Source: Stegostoma tigrinum (lineage: Eukaryota). Taken from it: 64,000 nt of DNA. Location of the stretch: the NCBI RefSeq assembly GCF_030684315.1, contig NC_081387.1, positions 21,818,647 to 21,882,646 on the forward strand, written 5' to 3'. Under the pieces are notes generated by a model. The model had not been told where the DNA came from and did not search any database. It saw only the letters and a program-made list of their open reading frames with translations. This document shows, one piece after another, positions 1 to 60,273 of this stretch (position 1 is its first letter; every line of letters begins with the position of its first letter). Made by a program: the position numbers and the translations under genes.

Positions 1-97
1 CTCAAGGATGTCCGAGTCTCTGACAGGGGACAGTACAAGTGCTTTGTGACATCTGCCATCAAACACAATGAGTTCAAACTCACGCTGGATGTGACAG
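1..97 (+). CDS. Gene 1 IgV exon, 3' part ([32 protein letters not shown])
   Basis: V-set DxGxYxC motif; donor GTCAGT at 98; homologous to the gene 2 IgV exon. Confidence 0.92.
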
Positions 98-13407: not shown

Positions 13408-13415
13408 CTGATCCA

Positions 13416-27600: not shown

Positions 27601-30600
27601 TCATTGTCACATAGGGATTTGGAGGCCACATCATTGAGTGCATTTAAAATAGAGATAGATAGACTCATAGGGAGATCAAAGATTATGGAGAGAAGACAAG
27701 AGAATGGGGTTGGGGAACATACCAGCCATGACTGAATGTAGTGCAGAGTCAATGGGCTGAATGACCTAATCCTGCTCCTAAATCTTATGATCTTTTGGAG
27801 TATTTCAGATTCAAATCTGATTGAAGTTACTTTGGAACAATGCCAGAGAACAATTTTCTGGTGCATGCAGGTCAGCTTCATAGTGAATTAAATGTTTCTG
27901 CAATATTTATGAGATTGTAAAAGGTCCTGTTCGAGAGTTTTAAAAAACAATGTTGATCCTGTAGCCTCTTTGAAGGCCCAAAAATGAGGGCCATTTGTAG
28001 AAATGTTGTCCTCATGAATAATTTGACTATGGGTCATTCCTGTCTGGACTGTCCCTCTCTCATCTCTCTGAGTGCGGTGTCTTCTGCCCTCCCCCAACTT
28101 CTTGCCCTGACAGATTGTGATCAAATTGTGGTTGCCCTCTAGAAAGTACAGGTCAGCTGCAATCTGACCGAGTGGTGTAAAGAGGCCAGGACAGGCCTTG
28201 CGGCCTACTCCCCTTCCTGATGTCTCTGTGATTGCAGGTACAGGCCGTCAGCCCACGATTGAGATGGAGGGCCAAACGGGGGATGGCATCAGACTGGGCT
28301 GCAGATCCAAAGGGTGGTACCCAGAGCCACCCGTGCTATGGACAGACGGAGATGGAGAGAACGTAGCAGCCCAGCAGCAAACCACGTACCAGCCGGACAC
28401 TCAGGAACTGCTCACGGTCAGCAGCTTCATCGAGATCCCCAAGCAGTCCACCAACAAGTACACTTGTGTCATTAATAACCTGATTCTGGAGGAGAAACAG
28501 GAGGCATACATCCGGATTGCAGGTCGGTCACAGTGGGAGAGGACCTTTACAGATACACAGCAAACTGGGGGAAAGGACGTGAATCTGATTGTAGAGAAAT
28601 ATATAAAATCCCGAGGAAACTCTGTGATTGAAACTGGCTCCTTGTGGCCCTGTTTAGCCAGAAGTGTCAAAGAGAGGCCCCTCATGGCTTTGGCTTGCCT
28701 CTTGTGGCAACAAAAGGCATTTCACAGGAGGGAGCGAGAGAGTGATGGAGTTTGAGGAAGAGTGTGAAGCTGCAATAGAGGGAGAAGGAGTAGATGTGAT
28801 GCAGGTTCAGGGGAGGGAGTGAGTGTGATAGAGGGAGAGGGTTGAACGGAGTTTTCTAAAAGGGAGAGATGTGATGAAGAGAGAGAGTGTGGGTGATGAG
28901 AGGAGAGGGAGATAGTGGAATGGAGGCTGGGAAGAGGAAGACGAGTAATGGAGGGTGAAGGGCTGATGAAGGGGGAGGGGTGATTGAATTTGGATACATA
29001 AAGGGCAAGGTCTTTTCCCCAGGGTAGAGCAGTCCAAAATCAGAGGGCATAGGTTTAAGGTGAGAGGGAAAATACTTAAATGGGACCCAAAGGGCAATGT
29101 TTCATGAGAGGATGATGCAAGTATGGAATGAGCTGTCAGAGGAGGTGGTGGAGGCTGGTACAATTACAATATTCAAAAGACATTTGGATGTGTCTATGTT
29201 TCCATGCTGTACATTTCTATGACTCCTTATCTTTCTAAAGGGTGTGACAATGGGTTTGTGTTAACTTAAACAGTTGAATGGTTCATTTTCTCACTCTTTC
29301 TCTCCTCACTGTCCACCTCTTCTTTCCCTCAAACCTGATCCCTCTCTCTCTCTCCTCTCCCTTCTCACCCTCTCATTCTTCCACCCCTCCATCTTGCCCC
29401 CTCTCCTCCTCAAACTCTTATTTTCTCTTTCTTTCTCTCTCTGTCTCTCTCCCTCATTCTCCATCCTTCCCCTCTCCTTCTTTCCTCCATGTTTATGCCT
29501 TCCCCCCTCTCACTGTCCAATTTGTCTCTCCCTCTCTTGTCACTTCCTGCTCTGTCTCCCTTCTCTCTCTCTCCATCTTGCTTACTCCCTCTTCCCCCCA
29601 CTTTCCCTCACAAGCTTCTCCCCTTCTTTTCCTCCTCCCTCTCATTCCCTCTCTCTTCCCCCACTCTCCCTAACACCCACATAATCTTTTCCCTCTCCCT
29701 CTCCTTCTCCCACTCTCTCTCCTCTCTGTGTCCCTCTCTTTCCGCTCCCCCCTCCCCCCGCTGCTTCCTTGCCTTCCTCTCTCTCCCTTCCCTTTCTCTC
29801 CACACAGATTCCTTCTTCCCACATGTTTCCGGATGGCAGATATGATTCTGGATCCTGTTTGTTCTGATTGTTGGAGTCATCGCTGTCGCAGTGTGGTACC
29901 TTCGGAAATTACAGAATGAGATTCATGGTGACAACCTCTGCTCAAACACTGACTACTTTTCTTTAAGAATAGAATACTGTGTACAATTCTGGTCACCCTT
30001 CTGTAGGATGGATGCTGTTAAACTTAAGAGGTTCCAGAAAGGATTTACAAAGATGTTGCCACGACCGGAGGGTTCAAATTATAGGGAGAGGCTGAATATG
30101 CTGGGACGTTTTACCCTGCAGTGTCAGTGGCAGGGGCCATCTTATAGGAGCTTATAAAATCGTGAGGGAAACGGATAGTGTGAATAGCTAAGGTTTTTTT
30201 CTGAGGGTGGGGGAGTCCAAAATTAGAGGCCATTGGTTTAAGGTGAGACGGTAAAGATTTGAAAGGGACCCAAGGGGTAAATTTTTCACACAGAGGGTGG
30301 TGCATGTATGGAATGAGCTGCCAGAGGAAGTGGTAGAGACTGGTACAATTACAACATTTAAAAGGCATCTGGATGGGTACATGAGTAGGAAGAGCTTAGA
30401 GGGAGGAGCAAATTACAGCAGATGCTGGAATTTGTACTGAAAACAAAAAGTGCTGGAGATCAGGCAGATCACAGCGGGTCAGGCAGCATCCATGGAGAGA
30501 AAGCAAGCTAACATTTTGAGTCTAGATGACGCTTCATCAGATTATCATCATTTAGATATGATGATAAATGGGACTAGGTCAGATTGGGATGTATGGTCAG

Positions 30601-33600
30601 TATGGACGAGTTGGACTGAAGGGTTTGTTTTTCAGCTGTATGACTGTGATGAATCTATAAAAATCCATAAACAGAAACTAATAATTTGTTAACACAAATT
30701 AAAACGGACAGTGCTGGAAATATTCCACAGATCAGGCAGAATCTGTGAAGAGAGAGACCAAGTTAATATTTGAGGGGAAATAAGGATTTATTTTTAGTGA
30801 GGTGTGTAATGAGGAACCTGTTCAAGACAGTGTGATACTGACACCATCTCCAGAGGTCATGATGCCCATTGAGTTCATTCATTTATTTGGTTTTCTTTTC
30901 TAGGCCTCAGGGAATCTAAAGATTTGCATGGTAAGTGATGTTTTTTCAGTCTGTGGGACGTGCTGATATTACATTGACTCTCGCTGCTGAGGAATTTCAC
31001 ACTTTCACCCTGACCTTTACAGTTTCTGCCTTGAGAGGGGCCAGACCTCTCCTATATGTTACTGACCACAACATTCTCAGGAGGCTGCCTGTGTCAGTTC
31101 CTAATCCTACCCTCAATTTATCTTGTCAGGGCATTCTATGTGGATAAATTCCTACCTGTAGGGGGTGGGTGATGACCTAGTGGTATTGTTGCTAGACTGT
31201 CACAACCAGCTCATGTTCTGGAGACCCGGGTTCGCATCCCACCACAGCAGATGGTGGAATTTGAATTCAATAAATTAAAAAAATAAGTCTGGAATTAAGA
31301 ATCTACTAAACACCGTGAAATCAATGATTGTGGAAAAACCCATGTGGTTCACCAACGCCCTTCAGGAAAGGAAATCTGCCACCATCATGTGGTCTGGCCT
31401 ACATGTGACTCCAGACTCACAATTGCTTTGTGAAATGGCCTAGCAAGCCATTCATCATAGAATCCCTACAATGTGGAAACAGGCCCTTTGCCCCAAAAAG
31501 GCCACACTGACCCTCAGAGCATCTCATCCAGACCCAACCCCTATCACCCACCTAAGCTACACATCCCTGAACACTACAGGCAATTTAGCATGGTCAATCC
31601 ACCTGCCCTACACATCTTTGGACTGTGGGAAGAAACTGGAGCACACCCACGCAGACAGTGGGAGAATGTGCAAACCGCACACAGATGATTACCTGAGAGT
31701 AGAATTGAACCCAGCTCCCTGGCGCTATGAGGCAGCAACTGTAACCACTGTGCCACCTTGGTACCCCATTCAGTTTTGCCAATCACTACAAAGTTTTAAA
31801 GAAATTAAATTGGGCCGATCACCTGATATCGACCTAGACACCGGAAAAGACAATGGCAGAAACAGCCCTCTCGATCCTGCAAAATCTTCTTTGCCAACAT
31901 CTGGGGGTTAGTGCCAAAACTGGGAGAGTTGTCTCCAAAACTAGTTAAATAACAGCTTGACATAGTCGTACTCACAGATTCGTACCTTAGAGACAACATT
32001 GCAGATACTACCATCACCAGCCCTGATTATGTCCTGTTCCATCTGCAGGACAGACCCAGCAGAGGTGGTAGCACAGTGGTTAGTGTTACTGGTTAGTCGG
32101 GTGGACATTGCTTTTGGAGTCCTCAACATTGACTCTGGACCCCATGAAGTCTGATGGCTTCGGGTTAAACATGGGCGAGAAAACCTCCTGCTCATTACCA
32201 CGTAGCTCCCTTGGTTGATAAATTGGTGCTCCTTCATACCGAATAAGTCTTAGATGAAGGACTGAGGCTGGCAAGGGCACAAAATGTACTCTGGGTGGGG
32301 GATTTCAATGTCCACCACCAAGAGTGGCTCGGCAACAGTACTACTGATTGAACAGGTTGGGTTTGAAAGGACATAGCTACTAGTCTGTGTCAGCGGCATA
32401 CTTTACCTCATCCCTACTAATCTGCCAGCCGCAGTCCATCTGTTTATGACAGTTTTGTAAGAGTGACCATTGCACAGATCTTATGGAGACAAAGTCCCAC
32501 CTTCACATTGAGAATAACCTCCATCGTGTTATGTGGCACCATCACCATGCTAAATGGGACAGACTTTTCATAGATCTAGCAACTCAAAGCTGGGCATCCA
32601 TGAGGCGCTGAGCCATCAACAGCAGCAGAATTGTACTCCAGCACAATCTGTAACCTCATGGCCCGGTATATCTCCCACTCAACCAATACCATCAAGCCAG
32701 GGGATCAACACTGGTTCAGTGGAGGGTGCAGGAGGGCATGACAGGAGCAGCACTAGGCATACCTGAAGATGCAATATCAATCTGGTGAAGCCACCAAACA
32801 GGACTACTTGCATGCTAAACAATGAAAGCAGCAAGTGATAGACAGAGCGAAGTGATCCCACAACCAACGGATTGACCTAAGCTCTGCAGTCTTGCCACAT
32901 CCCATCGTGAATGGTGGTGGACAATTTAACAACTCACTGAAGGTGGGGGCTCCACAAATATCCCCATGCTCAATGATGGAGGAGCCTGGCTCATCAGTGC
33001 AAAAGATAAGGCTGAAGCATTCACAGCAATTTTTAGCCAGAAGTAGCAAGTGGATGATCCATCTCAGCCGTCTACAGTGGTCCCCAGCATTACAGATACC
33101 AGAGTTCAACCAATTTTATTCAGTCCACATGATATCAAGAAACGGTTGGAGACAGGATACTGCAAAGGATACAGTCCCTGGCAACATTCCGGCAATAGTA
33201 CTGAACGTTTGTGCCCTAGAACTTGTCATTCCCCTAGCCAAACTGTTCCAGTACAGTTACAACACTGGTATCTTCCCAACAATGTGGAAATTTATCCAAG
33301 TATGTTCTGAACACAAAAAGCAGGACAAATCCAACATAGCCAATTACTGTCCCATCAATCTACTTTCAATAACCAGTAAAGTGATGAAAGGTGTCATTAA
33401 CAGCGCTATCAAGCAAAACCTGCCCAGTTTGGGTTCCTCCAGGGCCACAGATCCTGACCTCATTACATCCTTGGTTCAAGCTTGGATAGAAGAGCTGAAT
33501 TCCAGAGGTGAGGTGGGAGTGACAGCCCTTGATATCAAGGGTGATTTTGACTGAGTGTGGTATCAAGGAACCCTAGTAAAACTGTAATCAGTGGGTATCG

Positions 33601-36600
33601 GGGACAAAATCTTCAGTGGTTACAGTCATACCTGACACATAGGAAGATGGTTGCAGTCATTGGAGGTCAATCATCTCAGCTCCAGGACATCTCTGCAGGA
33701 GTTCCTCAGGGTAGTGTCCTTGGCCTAACCATTTTCAACTGATTCATCAATGACCTTCCCACCATCACCAGGTCAGAGGTAGGGATGTTCACTGATGATT
33801 GCACAATATACAGCACCATTCGTGACTCCTCAAACACTGAAGCAGCCCATGTTCAAATGCAACAAGATCTGGATAATACTCAGGCTTGGGCTGACAAGTA
33901 GCAAGTGATATTCGCACAACAGAAATGCCAGTCTATAATCATCACCAATAAGAGACAATCTAACCACTGTCCCTTGACATTCAATGATGTTACCATCACT
34001 GAATCCCCTACTATCATCATCCTGGGTGTTATCATTGACCACAGACTCAACTGGACTTGCTGCACAAACACAGTGGTTAGAAGAGCAGGTCAGAACCTAG
34101 GAATACTGTGGTGAGTAACTCACCTCCTGACTCCTCAAAGCCTGTCCACCATCACAAAGCACAAGTCAGGAGTGGGAAGGAATACTCCTCACTTGCCCCT
34201 GGATGAGTGCAGCCCCAATAACACTGAAGAACCTTGACACTATCCAGGACAAAGCAACCCGCTGGAATTTCACTACATCCACAAGCAACCACATACTCCA
34301 CCACTAATGCTCAGAAACAGCAGTGTATACTGTCTACAAGATGCACTGCAGAAATGCACCAAAGATCCTCAGACAGCACCTTCCAAACCCACAACCACTT
34401 CCATCCAGAAGGACAAGGGCAGCAGATATATGGCTACACCACCACCTCAAGTTTCCCTCCAGCCACTCACCATCCTGACTTGGAAATATATCGCCGCTCC
34501 TTCACTGTTGCTGGGTCAAAATCCTGGAATTCCCTCCTGAATGGCATTGTGGGACAACTCACAGAAGGAGATTCAAGAAGGCAGCTCACCACCAGCTTCT
34601 CAAGGGCAACTAGGGATGGACAAGAAATGCTGGCCAGCCAGTGATACCCATATCCCATAAATGAATAGAAAAAAAACATGCAACCCCATGCTCCAAGACT
34701 CTCTATCCCTTTCTGTCTCTTCCACTCTCACAACTCCCTCTCTTTTGCCCCCCTTGCTGCCCCTTCCACCCTCTCTTTCGCCCCTCTTTCCTCCCCCTTC
34801 CCCCCATCTCTTTCCGTCACATCTGTTTTTCCCCACCTATCTCTTCTCCCCTTCCCACACTTCTTCCCTCCTTTTCCCTTTCTCCCCCCTCTCTCTTCCA
34901 TCCTCCCTCTGCCCCTTCTTCTCCTCCTCCATCCCTCCTCCTGCTTTCTCCCTCCTCCTCCTCTCTCCCTCTGATCTTACAGTGTGAGAGTGGGCAATGT
35001 GATCTAGGTGATGTATGCTGCAATGGGAATGGGACAGGGTTCAGTATGAGAGGTGAAGGGCTGTTGCTGATTTAATGTTTTCTTTTGATCTGTTACAGAA
35101 TATCTAAAGCTGATGGAAGAAGTCAGTGAGTAACCATTCAAAGCAGAGACTTAAACCTGATGGGTGTGGGAAACCCAGTGATGTGGACATATCATCACAT
35201 CTGGGTGAAGAACATTTGTGAAACTGTAATCCCAGGTCTGGTGATGTAATGGATTACAAATAGATTGGCTTTGAAGGTCTCCATGGCATGAATGATAAGA
35301 AAGATTTGCATTTCTATGACAGCTTTCACATTCTGAGGATATCCCAAAGTTCTTTATTGAAAGTGATGTACATAACAATACAAGGACTGGGAGCAAGAGT
35401 TAGCCTCTTGACCTGAGCTGTTTCACTGTTCAGTCTGACCATGATGAATCTACTTCCCTGCACTATCCCATGTAAAGACTCTATCATTTTATTTTTCTGT
35501 ATTTTGGATCGATGAGGTAAAGAATTCTTAAGATTCATAACCCTTTGAGTGCGTATATTCTCTTCATCACAGACTGAATGGGAAAGATGGGTTTCAGAAT
35601 GGCCAGTGAGTTAGCTTTGAGAATCTAAGGAGACTGTCAATATAGTGCAATATTATAATGGTCAGTTTCTGTCTGTTGCAAAGGTGAACTCTATGTCATG
35701 GGTGAACTAAGGTTCCATCATGAACTTCTGGTATCAAGTCACAATCCATGACTTGGCACAAAGCTGTTGCTGACACTTCAGCACATAGCTGAGGGAGTGC
35801 TACGCTGTCAGAGGCACTGTCTTTTACGTCAGACTTTTAATGCAAGACATCACATGCTTTTGAATGTTTCGTAGCTCTTAGATGTATCCCTAGGAGGAAC
35901 AGAGAACTTCTTCCCAGAGTCTGAGTCAATATTTACCACTCACAAGAATCTGTTGATTTGGTAATTGTCCTGGTTACTGTTTGTGGAATCTTGCTGTGCA
36001 CAGATTAGTTGCTGCAGAAGGAAACAGTACAGAAGAGGCCTTTCAGTCCATCTGTTCTGTTTCCTTTGTGATCATATATGCTTTTGAGAGGGATTTGGTT
36101 TGTCTTGGTTCTTCTCAGGTAGGACTGTTGTAAATCTGGTGACAGGGTGTCTACTCCTGTAAAGCAGAGGAAGTAGCTATGAGATTATTGTTATATTATA
36201 TTAGGCAAAAGAAGCATGAATGTGTGGAGAGAGACAATGGGAACTGCAGATGCTGGAGAATCCAAGATAACAATGTGTGAAGCTGGATGAACACAGGGAC
36301 AGGGATGAGCTGGGCTGGTTTTGGGATGCAGTGGTATCCACTGTACCCAGTGTGGCTTCCTCTACATTGGGGAAACCAAGCGGAGGCTTGGGGACCGCTT
36401 TGCAGAATACTTCCACTCGGTTCGCAATAAACAACTGCACCTCCCAGTCGCAAACCATTTTAACTCCCCCTCCCATTCCTTAGACGATATGTTCATCATG
36501 GGCCTCCTGCAGTGCCACAATGATGCCACCCGAAGGTTGCAGGAACAGCAACTCATATTCCACTTGGGAACCCTGCAGTCTAATGGTTTCAATGTGGACT

Positions 36601-39600
36601 TCACAATCTTCAAAATGTCCTCTTCCCCCACCGCATCCCAAAACCAGCCCAGCTCGTCCCCTCCCCCCACCGCATCCCAAAACCAGCCCAGCTTGTTCCC
36701 GCCTCCCTAATCTGTTCTTCCTCTCACCTATCCCCTGCTCCCACCTCAAGCCACACCTCCATTTCCTTCCTACTAACTTCATCCCGCCTCCTTGACCTGT
36801 CCGTCTTACCTGGACTGACCTATCCCCTCCCTATCTCCCCACCTATACTCTCCTCTCCGCCTATCTTCTCTCCCTCTTCGGTCCGCCTCCCCCTCTCTCC
36901 CTATTTATTTCAGAACCTCTCCCCATCCCCCTCTCTGATGAAGGGTCTAGGCCTGAAATGTCAGCTTTTGTGCTCCTGAGATGCTGCTTGTCCTGCTGTG
37001 TTCATCCAGTTTCACATTTTGTTGTCATGAATGTGTGGAGTCAGGCTCACAGAGACCAAGGGTTATAGTCTTAGTTTTGCTTTCACTTGTTGAAGTTGGG
37101 TTTTGGAATGAAGCTGCTATATACAGTCTCTCTCTTTAGCGCTGCAAATGCTTGAGTTTTTTCTCTGCTGCTAGATTCATTCTGTCGGTGCTCCTTCTCC
37201 TGGACTGGAGGACATAGCAAGTGAGGGAAATCTGTTTTACTGAACGTGCCTTTGCAAAGGGTGTGTTTATGGGGCACTGCCATATTAGAACATTTGATGA
37301 GTTGTAGTGAAATGATATATTATTTTACTAAGCCTTTTAGGACAATTATTCTTTGTTTGTATTTTAGCTGTTGTAAAGGAATAAAGTGTGTTTAGCTTAA
37401 AGCCTAGTAATTTGAACAATCAAATCACATCTTCAAAGTAGTGCCTTACCTTGCCTTGAAATAAGTTAAAAATTAAGGTCTGTGCTATCTCTTTGATATA
37501 TTTGAGGGGGTTTGCGTCTGGTCCATAACACATTAATTTGACAGTACTGTTTCTACAAGACACTGGAGGACACACTGTCACTGTTATTTAAATCCAAATT
37601 AATCCTCCGTATTTCTCACATTGATTTTTTTTAAACTTTCAGAGCAAGATAAAATGAAGACAGATAAAGGTAAGTGATCAGAAACCCAGGGGTGGTGGAG
37701 ATGGTTCCATTAAGACCCTGATTGTGTGTCTGTGTGTCCGCGCAGTTCACAGCACATCCAAGACTCGGGTCAATTTCAAACAGAGATAACAAATGGTCAT
37801 TTGATTTGTCATCTCTCTGAGGTGTTTTCACTTTTTTTTTGTAGAGTATATAAGACTTCACCAGGAGATTGGTAAGAACCCGAAACCAATTGGATAAAGG
37901 TGATGGAAGAGAGGGAGTTGTGGATGGATTAACCCCACAGTAAGAGAATGGGAAAGCGCTGGGAAAGCTGGATGGTAACTCTGACTGAGACCAGACCCTA
38001 GTAGGAGAGAAGCAGTTTTGGAACAACGTGGAACTCATGCAGATCCTCCAATGGGTTTGCCGTAACATGGGTGATGGGTGACGGAGTGGGTTTGTGCTTC
38101 TGTCATTCTGGGATTAAGAGTAAGACAAGAGTTGACCTGGTTACTATCAACTCTGAATCACATTGTTGTTTGTTTTTCATTTCAGAGATGGCTAAGCAAA
38201 AAGGGAAACAAGGTGAGTTATGAGAACACACATTATTTGGATTGTAATGTTTTATTTCAGTGTCAGAATGTCTGAACACAATTTAACAGATTTGTAAAAA
38301 AAACTGCCTTATCACAGATTGTTCCATTAAAACCAGCACCAAATTATAATGCCTTCCTGTGAATATGTGTGAAGTGGGTGAGCTAATTCAGCCAATTCTT
38401 CAACGTTCACCGATATCAGAACTGGGGTCCTCGAGAAGCTGTTTTTCCAGGAATTTCCTGAGCTGATATAAACAGATCTGCGGATATCTGGAAATACATG
38501 CCTGTTGAAATGAGCAGGTTTCAATATCAACAGCCTTTAGCTATTTATTAATAGTGCAATGAGACCACTAGCTTCACCAATCCCTAAAGTGCTCGCTGAT
38601 CAAAACCGTCAGATATGTGATTCAACAAATCATATGTCTTTTTTTTATTTGGGCATGTGTTTGTGAATCAGTCGTTGATTTCACAATTGATTCTCTTCAC
38701 AGTTCTACAAATAACCAAATAAAGTAACATCTACCATATTTCAGTATTTTCTAGTTATTTCTAATCTTCGACATTCTGATGTGAGGAATACAAACCTCAC
38801 TACAGCAGGAGAACAATGCATTCCTGACAATACACAAATTCATCTAATTCTACACACCCTGACTGGGTTCTGACATTTTAACCTGTAAACTTGTGGCCAT
38901 CCAACACTCTGCTGCCCTTGTCTTCACTCATCCTAAGTTCCACTCACCTGCTTACTGACCCACATTAGCTCCTCATTAAACAGTGTCTCCATTCCTAATT
39001 TCTCAGTCAAGTCTTGCAGTCCCTTCATGTCCTTGCCCTCTCTACTCTGCAACTCTGAGGTTCCTGTGCTCCTTTAATTGTGGCCTTTTGCACGCCAAAA
39101 ATTGTAATGTCCCTTCATTGGAGAATGTAATTTCAGTTGCCTCAGTTCCAAACTCTCCTCCTGCATCCTCATCTCACTTTCATCCTTAAAACACATCATA
39201 AAAACGTCCCTGTTTGATAAGCTTTTAGTTACCTGACATGTTTTTATTTATAATATTTGTAGTATTTTGAGATGTTGTTGAAGAAAAACAGCCACTTTGT
39301 GAATGTAAATTGTTGTTGTGTAAAATCCGTGCAGTGTATTACCTGACAAGTGAGCAATGTCACACAAGGAGCATTCCTATAACAATTTCTATTAACTGCT
39401 TTTTTTTTCTAAACTATATTGTCTTTCAAAAAATCTCTGATTGGGAAATGAATTTCAGATTTTCAGTGACTTTTTTGATATAATCAATGATCTGGTTTTA
39501 AATTGCCTTGTCTGTTTTTCTCTTCAGAATGTAAGATGCTTCAGCAGGAGTTTGGTAAGAGATTATTTCCAAATCATAAACACTCTGGGATTGGGTTTTC

Positions 39601-42600
39601 AACTCGTGTTCAGCACTGGTTTCTTCACTAGCCTCACATGGTCATTAAAAGCTAAAAGCATTGTGGAGGACAAGTTTGTTTCTGGTGCTATCAACTTACA
39701 TGGGTTTGTTGTTGCTGGATGTATCTAGGGGTATTTGATGGGAAGAGCATAGCGAGCATCTTTATTCTATATCTAGCCCATGCTGTACATGTCCTGAGAG
39801 TTATATGATGGGACAGTGTAGAAGGATAAGGCTTACTCTGTTTCTGACCTGGGAGTGTTTGACAGGGACACTGCAGACAGAGCTTTACTCTGATTACAAC
39901 CCTGCAGTTTACCTGACCTGGCCGTGTGTGATGGGATAATATAGGGGGAGCTTCACTCTCTGTATAGTCCATGCTATATACCTGTGAATATTTCATGAGA
40001 CAATGTGAAAGAATGTGTTTTTCACTGTATCTAACTTGTGCTGCACCTGTCCTGACAATGTCTGATAGGGACAGTGTTGGGGGAGTTTAGCGCTGTCCTG
40101 TCCTGGGTCTCCTGACACTGCTAATGTTTTAATTTTGTGCCCTGACTCTCAGCCTCAGACTCGCACACAGTTAGTGTATTATTTTGGTAAGGTTAATGAT
40201 AGACACAATGATGATATGTGCTACCTGAGACACTCTTGCTTGCCAGGACAGTATTGAGTTAACCAATTAGCTCTTGCTGCCCTTTCCCTTTGAGGGAGTG
40301 GTGGGCATGGGGATGGGGAAACGTTGGATAACATGGTTCTCTGCGGAATTAAGGTTCCACACTGACATTCCTGGCAGGGACGGGACAGAACAGTGGGTGG
40401 TGGAATGGATAATCTCATCGCTGACCCATGCCGGGTGAGGGGAGACCCGAACAGTGTTCACACAAAGTGGTGACTCCTTCTGGAAGCTTCTATGCTTTAA
40501 TATCTCTGTTTCTTTATCCTTTTACAGAAAAGGAGAAGGCCACCATTTATGCAGGTAAGCAGAGGGCTGAGGAATGGGAGTGTCTTCTGGAGCAGATGTG
40601 TTCCGAATTCTGATTTGATGCACTCCTGAAGGTTTCAGCATGTGACCTTTTGCCTCCAATTCCTTTTAACCAATCAAAGAGGGCTTCTCTATCCCCAACT
40701 TTGTTTTAGGAGTTCAAAAGCATTCAAATAATCCACACAATGTATAATGTCTGTGAGCTCCCATTCTTGGGCATTGGTCACTGTGACAAAGATTTTGGCC
40801 AGTCATTTCTGGAGAGTTGTTTCCCTATGGCAGGGAAGGATGGGCAGTGAAGATCTGTTTATATTTCAAATATTTAACTTCTGGGTTAATGCCTTCTGGT
40901 CACTTCCCTACTCTGGAGGGAAATGAGACAGAGTCATAGAGATGTACAGCATGGAAACAGACCTTTCGGGCCAACTCGTCCACGCTGACCAGATATTCTA
41001 AATGAATCTAGTCCAATTTGCCGGCATTTGGCCCATATCACTCTAAACTCTTCCTACTTATATACCCTAAATTTTGTAATTGTACCAGCCTCCACCACTT
41101 CTTCTGGCAGTCCATTGCATACAGTCAGCACCTTCTGTGCAACAGAATTGCCCCTTTTAAATCTTTCCACTGTCGTCATAAACCTATGCCTTCTAGTTTT
41201 GGACTCCCCTACCCTGGGAAAACATCTTGGCCATTTACCCTTTCCATGTCCTTCATGATTATATAAACTTTTATAAGGTCACCCCTCAGCGTCTGACACT
41301 CCAGGGAAAATAACCCCAACCTCTTCAGTGTCCCCCAATAGCTCAAACCCTCCAACCCTGGTAACATCTTTGTGAATCTTTTCTGTACCCTTTCAAATGT
41401 CACATCATCCTTCCTATAGCAGAAACTCTTCACTCCCCAGCTAACACCAATGTTGGCCTGACCCAATGGTGACCCTGGCATTTGGGTAGATGATTCCTAA
41501 TGTAGGTGAGGGCTTGCTGTATGGGTACAGCTGGCACAGAGAGCACTACCCACTGCTCCAGCTTGTGGAGGTTGGTGCTACCGCTGGCCGCTGCTGGTCT
41601 CTCACAGACCGAGTGAGACCAGCTGGTGGAGACTGAGCTCAAAGCAGAGAGTTCAATATAGAGTGCAGAGGGCAACAAAGAATACGAGATGAAGAAGATG
41701 GGGACATTGTGAAATTAAGGTTTGTAACTGATATTTCTCCCTTGTCTGTTACAGAACATGTGCAGTTCAGGAAAGAAGTTGGTAAGTGGCTATATCGAAT
41801 TTTAAATGTTCATCGATGGTCACTTCGAACAAAATGCATATTTGCTGTGGCTGTTTCTCAGTCTGTGCTTGGACAGGGGATTGTTTTCTCAGTCTGTACT
41901 CAGACTGGGGGCTGTTTCTCAGTCTGTGCTTGGACAGGGGATTGTTTTCTCAGTCTGTACTCAGACTGGGGGCTGTTTCTCAGTCTGTGCTTGGACAGGG
42001 GATTGTTTTCTTAGTCTGTACTCAGACTGGGGGCTGTTTCTCAGTCTGTGCTTGGACAGGGGATTGTTTTCTCAGTCTGTACTCAGACTGGGGGCTGTTT
42101 CTCAGTCTGTGCTTGGACAGGGGATTGTTTTCTTAGTCTGTACTCAGACTGGGGGCTGTTTTTCAGTCTGTGCTTGGACAGGGGATTGTTTTCTCAGTCT
42201 GTACTCAGACTGGGGGCTGTTTCTCAGTCTGTGCTTGGACAGGGGATTGTTTTCTCAGTCTGTACTCAGACTGGGGGCTGTTTCTCAGTCTGTGCTTGGA
42301 CAGGGGATTGTTTTCTCAGTCTGTACTCAGACTGGGGGCTGTTTCTCAGTCTGTGCTTGGACAGGGGATTGTTTTCTCAGTCTGTGCTCAGACTGGGGGC
42401 TGTTTCTCAGTCTGTGCTTGGACAGGGGATTGTTTTCTCAGTCTGTGCTCAGACTGGGGGCTGTTTCTCAGTCTGTGCTTGGACAGGGGATTGTTTTCTC
42501 AGTCTGTACTCAGACTGGGGGCTGTTTCTCAGTCTGTGCTTGGACAGGGGATTGTTTTCTCAGTCTGTACTCAGACTGGGGGCTGTTTCTCAGTCTGTGC

Positions 42601-45600
42601 TTGGACAGGGGACTGTTTTCTCAGTCTGTACTCAGACTGGGGGCTGTTTCTCAGTCTGTACTCAGACTGGGGGTTGCTTCTCAGTCTGTGCTCAGACTGG
42701 GGGCTGTTTCTCAGTCTGTGCTCAGACTGGGGGCTGTTTCTCAGTCTGTACTCAGACTGGGGGCTGTTTCTCAGTCTATGCTCAGACTGGGGGTTGTTTC
42801 TCAGTCTACGCTCAGACTGGGGGCTGTTTCTCGGGCTGTTTCTCAGTCTGTGCTCAGACTGGGGACTGTTTCTCAGTCTGTGCTCAGACTGGGGGCTGTT
42901 TCTCAGTCTGTACTCAGACTGGGGGCTGTTTCTCAGTCTGTACTCAGACTGGGGGTTGCTTCTCAGTCTGTGCTCAGACTGGGGGCTGTTTCTCAGTCTG
43001 TACTCAGACTGGGGGCTGTTTCTCAGTCTGTACTCAGACTGGGGGCTGTTTCTCAGTCTACGCTCAGACTGGGGGCTGTTTCTCAGTCTGTGCTCAGACT
43101 GGGGGCTGTTTCTCAGTCTATGCTCAGGCTGGGGGCTGTTTCTCAGTCTACGCTCAGACTGGGGGCTGTTTCTCAGTCTGTGCTCAGACTGGGGGCTGTT
43201 TCGCAGTCTGTGCTCAGACTGGGGGCTGTTTCTCAGTCTGTGCTCAGACTGGGGGCTGTTTCTCAGTCTATGCTCAGGCTGGGGGCTGTTTCTCAGTCTA
43301 TGCTCAGGCTGGGGGCTGTTTCTCGGTCTATGCTCGGCCTGGGCCACTTTGTCAGTCTGTGTTTGGGTTGGGGACTGTTTTCTCGGCCTGTGTTTGGGCT
43401 GGGGAGCTGTTTCTCAATCAAATTATCAGTGTTGAGGAGCACACAGTTTAGCCTTGCTTTACCCTTTTCACCAGCACTGTATAAAGTCTCAGCTGGTTTC
43501 TTGTTCCATGTTGTTGCTAAGCTCTTGACTCTGTTTTACAGATGAAGCGAGGGAGTCAGACAAAGCAGGTATGTGACTGTGTGGGCCTTGAGGAGTAAAC
43601 TTAACCTCTGCACTGGGATGGGGAGGGGACTGTGATGGTGTATGCTCTGACAGAGAACAGGTAGAGACACAGCAAATGCTTCTCTCTTCACTAATTTTTA
43701 TTTTCAGTCTCTCAGTCACACTCTCTTTTTGTGTTTTTTCTCGCCTTCCTCTCCCATTCTCACGCTGTGCTCCTCAGCATCTCTTCCTCTCTCTCTCTGC
43801 TCTTAATGCTCCCCATATCCGTTCTTTCTTTCTCTTTTTTATTCCTTCTCTTTCTGTTTCTTCTGATCTCCTTCTTTGCCCTCGCTTCCTCTTCTCATTC
43901 TACTCATATCTCTCCAGATCCCTCTCTCTTCTCCTCCTAGTCATGTCTCTCCATTTCTCCACTTTGTTCATTCCGTCTTCCTCTTCCTATATTCTGTCTT
44001 CTCAAATCTCTCTCTCTCTGTATTCCTTGTCCACTTAACTCTGCCTGTCTGACTTACTCTGTCTGCCTGTCTATGTCGCTCTTGCTGTCTCTCCCCATCT
44101 ATCTCTCTCGCTCTCTCTCTCCGTCAGTCTCTTACCTTGTGCAAAATGCTTGGTTAGTGATTTAAAACAGAAAGTGCTGAAGAAAGTCAGCAGGTCTGGG
44201 AGCATCAGTTGAGAGAGAAAAACAGAGTTATAGTTTGTTTCAAATCAACATCATTATCTTTGGACTATCATTTGTAAATCACTTGGTAAAGTGTTAGAAG
44301 ATAGTATATGAACACAGGTCAGTTAATTTCCATTTGAAGTCAGCATTTGGAAATGTCTGTTGATATTGACATTTTTACATGTTGGTAAGATAGTATAGTC
44401 GGTTGTTTATAAAATCATTCATTTTGTTTGAAGATGTTAGCTTTCTTGCTGTAATATTTCTGATCATTCCTTACTTGCAGATTACCGGAAGCTACTCACT
44501 AAATTTGGTGAGTTAGTTGTCATTAAAATTTTGGCTTCGTCTTCAGCTTGGCTACAGTTAGTAAATGAACATAAAACCAGGTTCTGGTCTGGACCATTCT
44601 TTTCCTCACTCGAGGAGAACAAGCTTGGAATGACTGGTTACCCTCCAGATGTTGCAATCAACCTGTCTCCTGATATACATTCATAGACAGAGCTGCAGAC
44701 TTTCATGACAGTATGAACATCTAGAGATCACCATGGCTTCAAATGGTGGCTTTGTAAAAAATGACCTGAGCATTGGACCCCTCGTTTTAAGCTAAAATTA
44801 TAGAGTTTGAAATAATTCAAACTCTAGATCCACTTCAAATTGATCATGTGGGATTCTCCGCGTCCCAGTTCATGATCATGGATTGGATTTTTAATTTGCA
44901 TCAGGGTGGCAAGGCTAGCTTTTTTAAAATGATTCTGGCCAATGGGTCCAATCTCCATCTCTTCATGTTTCATTCTAGATGGAAACTCAGGCAATTCTAT
45001 AGCAGGTGGCTAATCCTCGAGTGCTTCATGGAACATATACTCTTACACATTCTTTAACAAATATCTACATATCAACAGATTTGAAGTGGGGAACTTCTGA
45101 AACTCACTCCACGGTGCCACTAGTTGGCTAGATGTTGATGTTGGAAAATAGAATGGGAACTGCTGGCATCGGTATTTACAATGTTGATCAGAAATGCTGC
45201 CCAGAGGTCAGGACATCACACCCTCGCAAGATTTTTCTTAACAATGCATCAGTTATTGCTGCCGTAACGTTAAAAAATGTGACTTTTATTCATTAAGAAA
45301 ACTCTGGCATGAAAAGAAAATTTGTTGATAATGCGAAATCTGTTGAGTGGGTTTTATTCACACTTATTCATTTCACTATTTCCTTTTAGAGCAATGGAGG
45401 CCTCTGGTCCAGTCAGGTATGTTCCCTGTATGAACACACTTGAAAAAAGAAATCTTCACTTGTTATTTCTATCAATGATTTGGATGTGAATATTGGAGGT
45501 ACGCTTAGTAAGTTTGCAGACGATACTTGATGGTATAGTGGACAGTGAAGAAGGTTACCTCAAAGTACAACGGGACCTTGAACTGATGGACTGAGGAGTG

Positions 45601-46740
45601 GCAGATGAAGTTTAATTTAGATAAATGTGAGGTGCTGTATTTTGGAAAGGGAAATCAGGGCAGGATTTTTAAAATTAATGGGACAGTCCTAAGGGGGTGT
45701 TGTTGAACAAGGAAACCTCCAAGTACAGGTCTATAGTTCCTTGAAAGTGGTGTTGCAGGTGGACAGGATAATGAAGAAGGCATTTGATATACTTGCCTTT
45801 ATTGGTCAGTGCATTGAGTATAGGAGGTGGGAGGTCACGTTGTGGCCATACAGGACACTGGTGAGGCCACTTTTGGAATACCGTGTTCAGTTCTAGTCTC
45901 CCTGATATAGGGAGGATGTTCTGGAAGTGGGAAGGGTTCAGAAAAGTTTTTCAAGGATGTTGCCAGGATTGGAGGGTTTGAGCTATAGGAAGAGGCTGAA
46001 TAGGCTGGGGCTGTCTTTCCCTGGAGTGTTGGAGGCTGAGGAGTGACATCATAGAATTTTATAGAATCATGAGGAGCATGGATAGGGTGAATAGCCAAGA
46101 TGTTTTCTACAGGGTAAGGGAGTCCAAAACTAGAGGGCATAGGCTTAAGAGAGGGGAAAGAATTCAAAGGGACATAAGGGGCAACTTTTTCACACAGAGG
46201 GTGATCTGTCTATGGAATGAGCTGCCAGAGGAAGTAGATGGAGGCTGGTACAATTACGACATTTAAAAGACAGCTGGATGGATATGTAATCAGAGATATG
46301 GGCCAAAAGCTGGCCAATGAGACTACATTAATTCAGCATATTTGTTTGGTCTGGACGAGTTGGGTTAAAGGGTCTGTTTCTGTCCTGTACAGCTGTATGA
46401 CTTGAAGGAATCTATTAGCATATGTGTATTGTTTGATGTTTGACCAGGATAATGTTGAAAAAAATAGAATAAGGGGGTGTGAAGATCAAAATTATGTTAA
46501 TCGCTACTTTTACTTAATTTAGTCCAAGGGTTTTGTGTTTGTGTGTCTTTGCCCGTTACTACCCATTATGGCTCAATCTCACATTTTTGGTTTACTGAAA
46601 ACCACAATGTACTTTGGCTGTTGTCTTATTTGAGAGTTTTACAGATTATTAATTGCAGATGTTACTGTTTCTGCAGAGTGGAACAGGATACGGAGCCATG
46701 CAGGTAAGATTCTCAATGTATAGGACTGCCCAAACCAGGA

Positions 46741-46806
<66 letters not shown>

Positions 46807-54818: not shown

Positions 54819-56477
54819 ATGAAGTGTGGAGCTGGATGAACACAGCAGGCCAAGCAGCATCTCAGGAGCACAAAAGCTGACGTTTCGGGCCTAGACCCTT
54901 CATCGGAGAGGGGGATGGGGTGAGGGTTCTGGAATAAATAGGGAGAGAGGGGGAGGCGGACCAAAGATGGAGAGAAAAGAAGATAGGTGGAGAGGAGAGT
55001 ATAGGTGGGGAGGTAAGGAGGGGATAGGTCAGTCCAGATAAGACGGACAGGTCAAGGAGGTGGGATGAGGTTAGTAGATTGGAGATGGAGGTGCGGCTTG
55101 GGGTGGGAGGAAGGGATGGGTGAGAGGAAAAACAGGTTAGGGAGGCAGAGACAGGTTGGACTGGTTTTGGGATGCGGTGGGTGGAGGGGAAGAGCTGGGC
55201 TGGTTGTGTGGTGCAGTGGGCGGAGGGGACGAACTGGGCTGGTTTTGGGATGCGGTGGGGGAAGGGGAGATTTTGAAGCTGGTGAAGTCCACATTGATAC
55301 CATTGGGCTGCAGGGTTCCCAAGCGGAATATGAGTTGCTGTTCCTGCAACCTTCGGGTGGCATCATTGTGGCACTGCAGGAGGCCCATGATGGACATGTC
55401 ACCAAAAGAATGGGAGGGGGAGTGGAAATGGTTTGCGACTGGGAGGTGCAGTTGTTTATTGCGAACCGAGCAGAGGTGTTCTGCAAAGCGGTCCCCAAGC
55501 CTCCGCTTGGATTCCCCAATGTATAGGCTCCCTTGTTCGCTCCACACTGCCCTCCAACCCCACCACACCCGGCACATTCCCCTGCAACTGCAGGAAATGC
55601 TACACTTGCCCCCACACCTCCTCCCTCACCCCTATCCCAGGCCCCAAGATGACTTTCCACATTAAGCAGAGGTTCACCTGCACATCTGCCAATGTGGTAT
55701 ACTGCATCCACTGTACCCAGTGTGGCTTCCTCTACATTGGGGAAACCAAGCAGAGTCTTGGGGACCGCTTTGCAGAACACCTCCGCTCGGTTCGCAATAA
55801 ACAACTGCACCTCCCAGTCACAAACCATTTCCACTCCCCCTCCCATTCTTTAGATGACATGTCCATCATGGGCCTCCTGCAGTGCCACAATGATGCCACC
55901 CGAAGGTTGCAGGAACAGCAACTCATATTCCGCTTGGGAACCCTGCAGCCCAATGGTATCAATGTGGACTTCACCAGCTTCAAAATCTCCCCCTCCCCCA
56001 CCGCATCCCAAAACCAGCCCAGTTCGTCCCCTCCCCCCACTGCACCACACAACCAGCCCAGCTCTTCCCCTCCACCCACCGCATCCCAAAACCAGTCCAA
56101 CCTGTCTCTGCCTCCCTAACCTGTTCTTCCTCTCACCCATCTCTTCCTCCCACTCCAAGCCGCACCTCCATCTCCAACCTACTAACCTCATCCCACCTCC
56201 TTGGCCTGTCCTCTTACCTGGACTGACCTATCCCCTCCCTACCTCCCCACCTATACTCTCCTCTCCACCTATCTTCTTTTCTCTCCATCTTTGGTGCGCC
56301 TCCCCCTCTCTCCCTATTTATTCCAGAACCCTCACCCCATCCCCCTCTCTGATGAAGAGTCTAGGCCCGAAACGTCAGCTTTTGTGCTCCTGAGATGCTG
56401 CTGGGCCTGATGTGTTCATCCAGCCTCACATTTTATTATTTTGGATACTCCAGCATCTGCAGTTCCCATTATCACTA
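54819..56477. mobile_element. Penelope-like inverted pair (minus 54819-55525, plus 55526-56477)
   Basis: GIY-YIG ORFs on both strands; the full tail is on the right arm; no TSD seen. Confidence 0.92.
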
Positions 56478-60200: not shown

Positions 60201-60273
60201 ACCACTGTGAGATCCGAATGGCGAGAGACATCCAGTATGTGTCCGGTCCATAACTGTCAGATTTTCCCTCCTG

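What the first reader, a model, noticed from the sequence alone, without database searches (positions are those of the whole stretch)
30904..46703. A ladder of strictly 27-nt microexons builds a tunable 9/18-residue helical stalk, changed only in pairs
Seen: all 16 stalk exons in the two genes are exactly 27 nt, phase 1, with no stops (gene 2: 99 aa; gene 1: 45 aa). Intron homology shows gene 1 lacks a block with 2 exons (37643, 38186) and a block with 4 exons (40528-44507), that is 18 and 36 residues. From exon 4 on they alternate between a type with hydrophobic positions 2/5/9 (ECKMLQQEF, EHVQFRKEV, DYRKLLTKF, EWNRIRSHA) and a more polar type. Known: mammalian BTN and chicken BG stalks mostly use 21-nt heptad exons, and 18 residues are 5 helical turns while 9 residues are 2.5 turns. 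Inference: this is an 18/5 (7+11) non-heptad coiled coil. Paired exon changes would alter B30.2 distance from the membrane (about 7 vs 15 nm if helical) without rotating it, while skipping one exon would flip the register by about 180 degrees. The BTN juxtamembrane coil controls partner choice and inside-out signalling, so this could act as a splice-encoded ruler or switch. I regard it as the best candidate for an undescribed system here. I may have missed an exon, and two even-sized events could be chance.
Basis: partly seen in the sequence, partly recalled or inferred. Interest (0 to 1): 0.82.

Follow-up and report, generated by a model that had tools for sequence, protein, structure and literature searches.

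The report
Shark butyrophilin stalk from 27-nt microexons
Two neighbouring shark butyrophilin genes build the helical stalk between membrane and B30.2 domain from strings of 27-base exons (12 and 5, not 11 and 5), a real and conserved 9/18-residue variant of the 21-base "heptad" exons of birds and mammals, but the proposed rule that exons change only in pairs does not hold.

Summary
The ladder is real. The window holds two tandem butyrophilin genes on the + strand (IgV, IgC, TM, microexons, PRY-SPRY). AG-27 nt-GT units with good splice signals are strongly over-represented only in the two stalk regions.

It has good splice sites. It matches unit 4 of every 12-unit orthologue in eight sharks and a skate. 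RNA contigs enter it at its acceptor.

Gene 2 therefore has 12 exons (108 aa), a perfect six-fold polar/hydrophobic alternation with an 18-residue period. Gene 1 lacks 3 + 4 = 7 of them. Orthologue and isoform models also differ by single units: 5 versus 4, and Mustelus X1 versus X2. "Only in pairs" is refuted, although stingrays have 10 units against 12.

Hydrophobicity peaks at 3.6 residues rather than 3.5. AlphaFold2 models the orthologue stalk as one 96-residue helix. Dimerisation and any ruler or switch role are untested.

Gene 2 in this assembly carries an in-frame TGA in its TM exon. Its RNA retains introns around the extra exons.

This is a new variant of a known kind, of moderate interest.

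The parts
1..97 (+). Gene 1, 3' end of the IgV exon (the rest lies upstream of the window)
   Evidence: Frame 0 reads ..[33 protein letters not shown], the same as P0159 up to residue 137. It is homologous to the IgV exon end of gene 2.
4525..4809 (+). Gene 1, IgC exon (285 nt, phase 1)
   Evidence: Pfam C2-set_3, the BTN3A2-like Ig-C domain, E=5.8e-23. Part of the chain that translates exactly to P0159.
5651..5770 (+). Gene 1, transmembrane exon (120 nt), ends ..LRKLQNEIQ + G
   Evidence: AF2 models it as a helix starting at residue 240 of P0159.
6063..6089 (+). Gene 1 stalk exon, unit 1 (GLRKSEDNL)
   Evidence: AG|27|GT with pyrimidine tract 18/20. Present in P0159.
7607..7633 (+). Gene 1 stalk exon, unit 2 (ERQRLLDVT)
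9889..9915 (+). Gene 1 stalk exon, homologue of unit 6 (ECEKLQQKL)
   Evidence: Flanks are homologous to gene 2 exon 39528.
10191..10217 (+). Gene 1 stalk exon, unit 11 (EQWRPLVQS)
   Evidence: 26/27 nt identical to 45390-45416.
10533..10559 (+). Gene 1 stalk exon, unit 12 (EWNRIQSYA)
   Evidence: 25/27 nt identical to 46677-46703.
12857..13407 (+). Gene 1, PRY-SPRY (B30.2) exon with stop codon
   Evidence: Pfam PRY 5.6e-25 and SPRY 8.1e-20. Exact match to P0159.
25243..25605 (+). Gene 2, IgV exon (363 nt)
   Evidence: Pfam V-set. Splice sites and translation checked.
28238..28522 (+). Gene 2, IgC exon (285 nt)
   Evidence: Pfam C2-set_3, E=2.3e-22. 271/285 nt identical to the gene 1 IgC exon.
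29808..29927 (+). Gene 2, transmembrane exon, with an in-frame TGA at 29843-29845
   Evidence: Translation reads [39 protein letters not shown]. Orthologues have Ala at that codon.
30904..30930 (+). Gene 2 stalk exon 1 (GLRESKDLH), polar type
   Evidence: Aligns to unit 1 of the 12-unit orthologues.
35099..35125 (+). Gene 2 stalk exon 2 (EYLKLMEEV), hydrophobic type. It ends in A, not G.
   Evidence: RNA contigs break or enter at 35098, which is its acceptor.
37643..37669 (+). Gene 2 stalk exon 3 (KQDKMKTDK), polar type
   Evidence: Orthologue unit 3.
37845..37871 (+). Gene 2 stalk exon 4 (EYIRLHQEI), hydrophobic type.
   Evidence: Pyrimidine tract 16/20, donor TTG|gtaaga. 78% DNA match, splice sites included, to exon 39528. 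Orthologue unit 4 reads EHQRLHQEI, EYQRLHQEI or EYQRLRQEI. RNA contig X10 record 8 enters at 37843, and unitigs overlap by k-1 at 37843-37872.
38186..38212 (+). Gene 2 stalk exon 5 (EMAKQKGKQ), polar type
   Evidence: The joint 38212|39528 appears in all 4 RNA runs.
39528..39554 (+). Gene 2 stalk exon 6 (ECKMLQQEF), hydrophobic type
   Evidence: The joints 38212|39528 and 39554|40528 appear in all 4 runs.
40528..40554 (+). Gene 2 stalk exon 7 (EKEKATIYA), polar type
   Evidence: The joint 39554|40528 is seen.
41755..41781 (+). Gene 2 stalk exon 8 (EHVQFRKEV), hydrophobic type
43542..43568 (+). Gene 2 stalk exon 9 (DEARESDKA), polar type
44481..44507 (+). Gene 2 stalk exon 10 (DYRKLLTKF), hydrophobic type
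45390..45416 (+). Gene 2 stalk exon 11 (EQWRPLVQS)
   Evidence: The peptide is nearly invariant across the elasmobranch orthologues (EQW[RK]PLV..; 5 of 11 read EQWRPLVQS).
46677..46703 (+). Gene 2 stalk exon 12 (EWNRIRSHA)
   Evidence: The orthologue unit aligns to human BTN2A1 ..LRWRRTFLHA just before the PRY domain.
49995..50512 (+). Gene 2, PRY-SPRY (B30.2) exon with stop codon
   Evidence: Pfam PRY 7e-14 and SPRY 3.2e-21. Acceptor and translation (ANVKMDPETANACL..CPVKN*) checked.
37872..38185 (+). 314-nt intron between exons 4 and 5 of gene 2, retained in the assembled RNA contigs. It is out of frame and stops after 8 codons.
   Evidence: Contig pieces 37843-38210 and 37301-38210 are continuous. 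Read-through translation.

Best explanation
The window holds two tandemly duplicated butyrophilin-family genes. The genome is probably that of the zebra shark, Stegostoma tigrinum. Each gene encodes IgV, IgC, a TM helix, a cytoplasmic juxtamembrane stalk and a PRY-SPRY (B30.2) domain.

Shown. The stalk is encoded by a ladder of symmetrical phase-1 exons of exactly 27 nt, or 9 residues each. Gene 2 has 12 and gene 1 has 5. Each exon ends in G (one in A) and the next begins with A, so nearly every unit starts with Glu or Asp. In the 12-unit form the units alternate strictly: a polar, Lys/Glu-rich type, then a type with hydrophobic residues at positions 2, 5 and 9. This gives six 18-residue repeats. 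The 12-unit form is conserved unit for unit in eight shark species and a skate. Four stingray and mobulid species have 10 units.

Inferred. The stalk is an about 100-residue alpha-helix of 14-16 nm. Its hydrophobic seam repeats every 18 residues, or 3.6 residues per turn. By analogy with mammalian BTN2A1 and BTN3A1 and with chicken BG tails, it most likely pairs with a second chain as a nearly straight coiled coil. That rod would hold the B30.2 domain away from the membrane and couple it to the TM and ectodomain.

Every exon is 3n and phase 1-1, so exons can be lost, gained or skipped without a frameshift. That has happened in steps of one as well as two. Gene 1 keeps units 1, 2, 6, 11 and 12. 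Its Hemiscyllium orthologue keeps 1, 2, 6 and 12. There is no pairs-only rule.

In this assembly gene 2 has a stop codon in its TM exon, and its RNA retains introns around exons 2 to 5. This particular copy may therefore be a null allele, or may make only a truncated product.
For: - Architecture: Pfam V-set, C2-set_3 (BTN type), PRY and SPRY. The closest solved structures are BTN2A1, BTN3A1 and BTN3A3.
- Exons: 27-nt enrichment; splice sites and phase; exact match of the gene 1 chain to model P0159.
- Twelfth exon.
- RNA: joints 38212|39528 and 39554|40528 in four runs; the acceptors of 35099 and 37845 are marked by contig entries and breaks.
- Conservation: 12 units in Hemiscyllium, Chiloscyllium punctatum, C. 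plagiosum, Heterodontus, Cetorhinus, Carcharodon, Mustelus and Leucoraja. 10 units in Hemitrygon, Hypanus and two Mobula species.
- Periodicity: large hydrophobic residues occupy folded positions 11, 14 and 18 in 0.56, 0.94 and 0.75 of cases, and 0.36 or less elsewhere. Power is 4.29 at period 3.6 against 0.62 at 3.5 on the six-sequence mean profile.
- Helix: AF2 on P0154 gives one helix, residues 283-378, with pLDDT 78-91.
- Odd steps: 3 + 4 exons missing in gene 1; 4 against 5 units in the Hemiscyllium gene 1 orthologue; Mustelus X1 and X2 differ by one unit.
Against: - No dimer was modelled or measured. Only three of the five expected core positions per 18 residues are reliably hydrophobic.
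- On single sequences the helical-range periodicity is only modestly above shuffles: 41 of 2000 for gene 2 and 68 to 614 of 2000 for the orthologues.
- AF2 gives the short gene 1 stalk pLDDT below 50.
- The donor of exon 37845 was not seen in use. The assembled contigs run through the next intron, and 40 joints were not displayed.
- The gene 2 reading frame is broken by TGA at 29843-29845.
Confidence: 0.8

Rival explanations
1. The stalk is an 18/5 coiled coil whose length is changed only by pairs of exons, so that B30.2 distance changes without rotation. Single-exon skipping would act as a 180-degree register switch, making the ladder a splice-encoded ruler or switch.
For: - The 18-residue two-exon super-repeat and the 3.6 periodicity are real.
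- Among gene 2 orthologues the only length change seen is a pair: 12 units against 10, with units 8 and 9 missing in stingrays and mobulids.
- An older Chiloscyllium model lacks two pairs.
Against: - Gene 2 has 12 exons, so gene 1 lacks 3 + 4 = 7.
- Gene 1 orthologues have 5, 4 and 2 units.
- Mustelus isoforms X1 and X2 differ by one unit, and a related gene has a 33-nt unit.
- The 8-unit Chiloscyllium model is superseded by a 12-unit NCBI model.
- No exon-skipping joint was among those listed for the RNA laid here, though 40 joints were not shown.
Confidence: 0.05
2. In this genome copy the gene 2 ladder is a relic. Gene 2 is a recent null allele or pseudogene, or makes only a secreted or truncated IgV-IgC product. 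Its stalk and B30.2 exons are transcribed but not translated as part of a membrane protein.
For: - There is an in-frame TGA at 29843-29845, at the start of the TM helix.
- No full-length gene 2 protein appears in the database searches, although gene 1's model does.
- RNA contigs retain the intron after exon 35099 and the 314-nt intron 37872-38185, which brings stops.
Against: - All 12 microexons, their splice sites and the B30.2 exon are intact and align residue for residue with functional orthologues.
- The gene is transcribed and most of its downstream introns are removed.
- The TGA could be an allele of the sequenced individual or an assembly error. It could not be checked in reads.
Confidence: 0.4
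3. The stalk is a single, stable alpha-helix or flexible charged spacer that does not pair. The 18-residue pattern would then reflect exon-pair duplication history and splice-site constraints, not a dimer seam.
For: - 38-48% of the residues are charged, with 8-12 opposite-charge i/i+4 pairs per 108 residues.
- Two of the five expected core positions per repeat are polar or Ala.
- AF2 models a straight helix for the monomer.
- The Glu/Asp at position 1 of each unit is imposed by the G|A splice junction.
Against: - The hydrophobic positions 2, 5 and 9 of every second unit are conserved across elasmobranchs, which is more than duplication history predicts.
- Mammalian BTN juxtamembrane regions and chicken BG tails are described as coiled coils (PMC10665462, PMC4046983).
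- The charge content is below that usual for single-helix domains (my own knowledge, not tested here).
Confidence: 0.15

Closest known systems
Mammalian butyrophilins (BTN2A1, BTN3A1/A3, BTN1A1)
   Same: - Same domain order: IgV, IgC, TM, short-exon-encoded juxtamembrane helix, PRY-SPRY.
- They are the best matches among solved structures (E about 1e-89 to 1e-81).
- The last stalk unit (EWNRIRS.A) aligns to human BTN2A1 ..LRWRRTFLHA just before the PRY domain.
- The juxtamembrane region is described as a coiled coil that controls the topology of the IgV and B30.2 domains (PMC10665462).
   Different: - The mammalian stalk exons are called 'heptads' in the literature and are few (PMC6790196, PMC4046983).
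- Here the units are 27 nt (9 residues). There are up to 12 of them, with an 18-residue super-repeat and a stalk about twice as long.
- I could not check mammalian exon sizes with these tools.
Chicken BG genes (BTN-family, MHC B locus)
   Same: - The cytoplasmic tail is built from a long ladder of tiny in-frame exons.
[quoted passage not shown]
- The exon number varies between paralogues, from 13 to 36 (PMC4046983).
   Different: - BG exons are 21, sometimes 24, nt long and follow a heptad logic.
- BG proteins have a single IgV domain and no B30.2.
- BG exon number varies widely within a haplotype. The shark 12-unit ladder is fixed across elasmobranch orders.
Non-heptad coiled coils (7+11 = 18 residues per 5 turns)
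   Same: The hydrophobic spacing is 3-4-3-4-4 within each 18 residues, and the spectral peak lies at 3.6 residues.
   Different: Membership rests on sequence periodicity only. Two of the five core positions are weakly hydrophobic or charged, and no oligomer was modelled.

Membership tests
Butyrophilin (BTN) family | N-terminal IgV (V-set) domain | tested here: met
   Pfam V-set on window:25206-25607, E=1.5e-7. P0159 carries PF07686.
Butyrophilin (BTN) family | Membrane-proximal IgC domain of the BTN type | tested here: met
   Pfam PF22705 C2-set_3, E=2.3e-22 for gene 2 and 5.8e-23 for gene 1.
Butyrophilin (BTN) family | Single transmembrane helix | tested here: met
   A hydrophobic stretch ([18 protein letters not shown]) lies in a 120-nt exon. 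AF2 models a helix there. In gene 2 it is preceded by an in-frame TGA.
Butyrophilin (BTN) family | Juxtamembrane segment encoded by several very short in-frame exons | tested here: met
   5 and 12 exons of 27 nt, all phase 1. The size differs from the 21-nt 'heptads' of the literature.
Butyrophilin (BTN) family | C-terminal PRY-SPRY (B30.2) domain | tested here: met
   Pfam PRY and SPRY in both genes.
Canonical heptad coiled coil | Hydrophobic periodicity of 3.5 residues (7/2) | tested here: not met
   Power at period 3.5 is 0.62 against 4.29 at 3.6 on the six-sequence mean profile. The units are 9 residues, not 7.
18/5 (7+11) non-heptad coiled coil | Hydrophobic seam repeating every 18 residues, with 3-4-3-4-4 spacing | tested here: inconclusive
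   Positions 11, 14 and 18 are strongly hydrophobic (0.56-0.94). Positions 3 and 7 are weakly so (0.28, 0.36). Shuffle support is modest.
18/5 (7+11) non-heptad coiled coil | Formation of a parallel dimer or higher oligomer | not testable with these tools
   Only monomer AF2 is available. It gives one straight helix.
   12 against 5 units, missing blocks of 3 and 4. 5 against 4 units in gene 1 orthologues. A one-unit difference between Mustelus X1 and X2.

The most novel reading that the evidence does not exclude
The conserved two-exon, 18-residue super-repeat makes a straight, non-supercoiled dimeric rod of about 16 nm, found only in elasmobranch butyrophilins. Because each 27-nt exon is half a repeat (2.5 turns), losing or skipping a single exon, as in gene 1 and in annotated isoforms, would turn the seam to the opposite face. 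That would change pairing partner or B30.2 orientation. Exon number would then encode both reach and register, not reach alone.
Probability: 0.12. Interest if true: 0.7.

Novelty: new variant of a known kind. Interest (0 to 1): 0.45.

Why it matters
Butyrophilin juxtamembrane helices carry the "inside-out" signal from the B30.2 domain to the ectodomain in mammals. Chicken BG tails show that microexon ladders can diversify such helices.

The elasmobranch genes show a third solution: 27-nt exons in a strict two-type alternation. It is fixed at 12 units across sharks and a skate, so it is under constraint and old. It gives a natural series of stalk lengths (2, 4, 5, 10 and 12 units) for testing how stalk length and register affect BTN pairing and signalling.

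It is also a practical warning. 27-nt exons are easily missed, both by a reader and by gene predictors. An older Chiloscyllium model has only 8 units.

It does not open a new kind of system, and the attractive pairs-only rule is not real.

Tried and rejected
- Other 27-nt AG..GT candidates in gene 2 were rejected: 33481-33507 (inside repeat-derived ORFs), 38590-38616 (poor acceptor, donor TAT|gtgatt), 39614-39640 and 44979-45005 (DGNSGNSIA). The 12 accepted exons already match the orthologues' 12 units one to one, and these peptides have no counterpart.
- In-frame candidates of other lengths (12-120 nt) in both stalk regions gave nothing with comparable signals or homology.
- I searched gene 1 for remnants of units 3-5 and 7-10 by blastn of exon plus flanks (word size 7). 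None were found.
The exon structure of other species therefore rests on protein periodicity.
- I sent no joined spliced model of gene 2 to any search or fold tool. Exons were searched singly by reference (the IgC exon; Pfam on single ORFs), and database orthologues stood in for the joined protein. Exon translations were concatenated only inside local scripts, for periodicity statistics and for comparison with P0159.
- Searches of the scan's earlier notes returned titles only. The paper searches found no description of 27-nt butyrophilin stalk exons or of shark BTN stalks. This covers the held library only.
- The TGA in the TM exon could not be checked in reads, because read laying allows one call and it went to the stalk.
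Full report
WHAT IS IN THE WINDOW

The + strand carries two butyrophilin-like genes. Pfam on single open frames finds the expected domains:
- a V-set domain at 25206-25607;
- the BTN3A2-like Ig-C domain (PF22705) at 28168-28752 and at 4479-4898;
- PRY plus SPRY at 12580-13404 and at 49922-50509.

Exact exon limits were worked out from splice sites and translation.
- Gene 1: IgV exon end 1-97, IgC 4525-4809, TM 5651-5770, B30.2 12857-13407.
- Gene 2: IgV 25243-25605, IgC 28238-28522, TM 29808-29927, B30.2 49995-50512.

All junctions are phase 1.

A protein listed without source or name is, by the tool's convention, one the window itself encodes. That protein is P0159 (499 aa). The gene 1 exon chain translates exactly to its residues 138-499. 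P0159's contig length is 31,945,831. Named Stegostoma tigrinum proteins share that length, so the genome is most likely the zebra shark. This is an inference.

THE OBSERVATION

Each listed exon is AG|27 nt|GT with a pyrimidine tract, is stop-free in phase 1, and ends in G.

The signal is far beyond chance. I counted AG-N-GT units with a pyrimidine tract of at least 12/20 and a donor matching at least 7/9 positions, for N from 12 to 60.
- N=27 gives 5 and 11 in the two stalk regions.
- Every other length gives 0-4.
- N=27 gives 0 elsewhere on the + strand and 2 on the whole - strand.

Gene 1's five exons (6063, 7607, 9889, 10191, 10533) are exactly those used in the database model.

THE MISSED EXON

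A slightly looser scan shows another 27-nt unit in gene 2 at 37845-37871. Four lines of evidence support it.
- Splice signals: acceptor ctttttttttgtag, donor TTG|gtaaga, peptide EYIRLHQEI.
- Its DNA, splice sites included, is 78% identical to exon 39528.
- Annotated orthologues have 12 nine-residue units between the TM helix and the PRY domain. These are Hemiscyllium ocellatum, Chiloscyllium punctatum, C. plagiosum, Heterodontus, Cetorhinus, Carcharodon, Mustelus and the skate Leucoraja. Their unit 4 reads EHQRLHQEI, EYQRLHQEI, EYQRLRQEI and the like.
- RNA evidence, described in the next section.

With this exon the 12 window units align one to one with the orthologues' 12 units. The other 27-nt candidates (33481, 38590, 39614, 44979) have no counterpart and were dropped.

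RNA

Four runs from one study hold 93-96% of the sampled words of the gene 2 B30.2 exon. Their contig totals are of transcriptome size (42-88 Mb). I laid them on 35050-41049.

The GT..AG joints 38212|39528 and 39554|40528 appear in all four runs, inside contigs of 2.4-3.0 kb.

Contig X10 record 8 has 277 nt of upstream sequence and then enters the genome at 37843. The two extra letters, AG, fit the end of exon 37643-37669. Unitigs ending at 37872 and unitigs starting at 37843 overlap by 30 nt, which is k-1. That is what a branch between spliced and unspliced predecessors at this acceptor would produce.

The same contigs then run straight through the 314-nt intron 37872-38185. Other contigs enter at 35098, the acceptor of exon 35099, and run on into its intron. 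By contrast, introns 38213-39527 and 39555-40527 have no cover.

So the acceptor of the twelfth exon is used. Its donor was not seen in use, and 40 joints were not displayed. The region around exons 2 to 5 is spliced poorly in these samples. Read-through meets stop codons within 8 to 17 codons. Contigs show presence, not absence.

CONSEQUENCES FOR THE PARITY CLAIM

Gene 2 has 12 exons (108 aa). The units are:
[108 protein letters not shown].

This is a strict polar/hydrophobic alternation from the first unit.

Gene 1 keeps units 1, 2, 6, 11 and 12. The homology map shows it lacks a block of three exons (37643, 37845, 38186) and a block of four (40528-44507). That is seven in all.

Other cases:
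- The Hemiscyllium orthologue of gene 1 (isoform X1, P0269) has four units (1, 2, 6, 12). A second Hemiscyllium protein has two.
- In a related shark gene, the Mustelus isoforms X1 and X2 differ by the single unit EWKRICECE.
- The Chiloscyllium plagiosum isoforms X1 and X2 differ by an 11-residue unit, so 27 nt is not universal.

In favour of pairs:
- Hemitrygon, Hypanus and two Mobula species have 10 units, lacking units 8 and 9.
- An older Chiloscyllium model lacks two pairs, but the NCBI model for that species has all 12.

It is met.

STRUCTURE

I used the six 12-unit sequences: the window's gene 2 and five orthologues.

Large hydrophobic residues concentrate at positions 2, 5 and 9 of every second unit (0.56, 0.94 and 0.75). 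They are weaker at positions 3 and 7 of the polar unit (0.28, 0.36). The spacing is 3-4-3-4-4 per 18 residues.

The mean hydrophobicity spectrum has power 4.29 at period 3.6 against 0.62 at 3.5. A strictly 18-periodic pattern can only put helical power at 18/5. On single sequences the peak is reached by 41 of 2000 shuffles for gene 2 and by 68 to 614 of 2000 for the orthologues. Support is therefore real but modest.

AlphaFold2 was run on the Hemiscyllium orthologue P0154 with a 14-sequence alignment. It gives:
- a TM helix at 242-273;
- a low-confidence break at 274-282, which is unit 1;
- one continuous helix at 283-378, 96 residues, with pLDDT 78-91.

The window's own gene 1 model P0159 is also helical there, but with pLDDT below 50 at 277-297.

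Charged residues make up 38-48% of the stalk. No multimer could be modelled, so "coiled coil" remains an inference. It rests on the periodicity and on the family, since the BTN juxtamembrane region and the BG tails are described as coiled coils (PMC10665462, PMC4046983).

The Glu or Asp at the start of almost every unit follows directly from the exon-end G plus the exon-start A.

A CAVEAT THE FINDING DID NOT MENTION

Gene 2's TM exon reads DSFFPHVSGWQI*FWIL.., with TGA at 29843-29845. Orthologues and gene 1 have Ala at that codon.

No full-length gene 2 protein turned up in either word search, although gene 1's did.

Add the intron retention, and this copy of gene 2 may be a recent null allele or a truncated form. 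All 12 microexons and the B30.2 exon are nevertheless intact and conserved.

COMPARISON WITH WHAT IS KNOWN

The closest solved structures are human BTN2A1, BTN3A1 and BTN3A3. The last shark unit aligns to ..LRWRRTFLHA, just before the human PRY domain.

The literature in the held library describes BTN stalk exons as "heptads" (PMC6790196) and chicken BG tail exons as 21, sometimes 24, nt (PMC4046983). A 2026 survey of BTNs across jawed vertebrates mentions only a variable number of heptads (PMC12841164). I found no description of a 27-nt ladder. This covers the held library only, and I could not check mammalian exon sizes.

VERDICT

The microexon ladder and its 9/18-residue logic are real, conserved and a distinct variant of a known BTN/BG theme. 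The count was off by one, and the pairs-only rule and the switch idea built on it are not supported.

Interest is moderate at 0.45. Confidence is 0.8 for the anatomy and about 0.5 for the dimeric-rod mechanism.

- Read laying and the look-up of sequencing runs allow one call each, and both were used.
- No contig taken for human was handled.

Noticed in passing
window 29843-29845: There is an in-frame TGA at the first turn of gene 2's TM helix (DSFFPHVSGWQI*FWIL..). Gene 1 has GCG (Ala) at that codon and the orthologue proteins have Ala. All three bases differ from the gene 1 codon. Gene 2 may be a null allele, a pseudogene or a secreted form.
   Followed up: partly
window 35126-37642 and 37872-38185: RNA contigs of four runs cover these introns of gene 2 at depths similar to the exons. 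The next two introns (38213-39527, 39555-40527) have no cover. This is intron retention or slow splicing, precisely around the exons that gene 1 lacks.
   Followed up: partly
window 41849-43416: A large tandem array lies in the intron after exon 41755. It has a 61-nt unit in 24 copies at 94% matches, with a 30-nt sub-period in its 3' part. It is open in three frames by chance of its composition.
   Followed up: partly
window 4525-4809 vs 28238-28522, and 12857-13407 vs 49995-50512: The IgC exons of the two genes are 271/285 nt identical, and the last two stalk exons 25-26/27. The B30.2 exons show no DNA similarity and belong to different BTN lineages ([14 protein letters not shown].. against ANVKMDPETANAC..). 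This suggests gene conversion of the 5' half, or a chimeric origin of gene 1.
   Followed up: no
window 13400-15100, 17500-20800, 36230-37010, 55000-56400, 60100-61900 (both strands): There are many copies and fragments of a retroelement with reverse-transcriptase-like ORFs and a GIY-YIG-like motif (..CTSANVVYCIHCSQCGLLYIGETKRRLGDRFAEHL..), which looks like a Penelope-like element. The copy at 36230-37010 draws RNA contig depths in the tens of thousands.
   Followed up: no
window 46724-46800: A (GT)n microsatellite begins about 20 nt after the donor of the last stalk exon of gene 2.
   Followed up: no
proteins P0283, P0286, P0274, P0156 (other species, not in the window): A neighbouring BTN paralogue in skates and sharks has a different stalk of about 63 residues (..KELYKRPTLEKHKTICDAVDELELFTANAKENLELERTLCTEAAERVIGSA..). 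Some gene models fuse it with the 12-unit gene. Whether it too is built of 27-nt exons was not examined.
   Followed up: no
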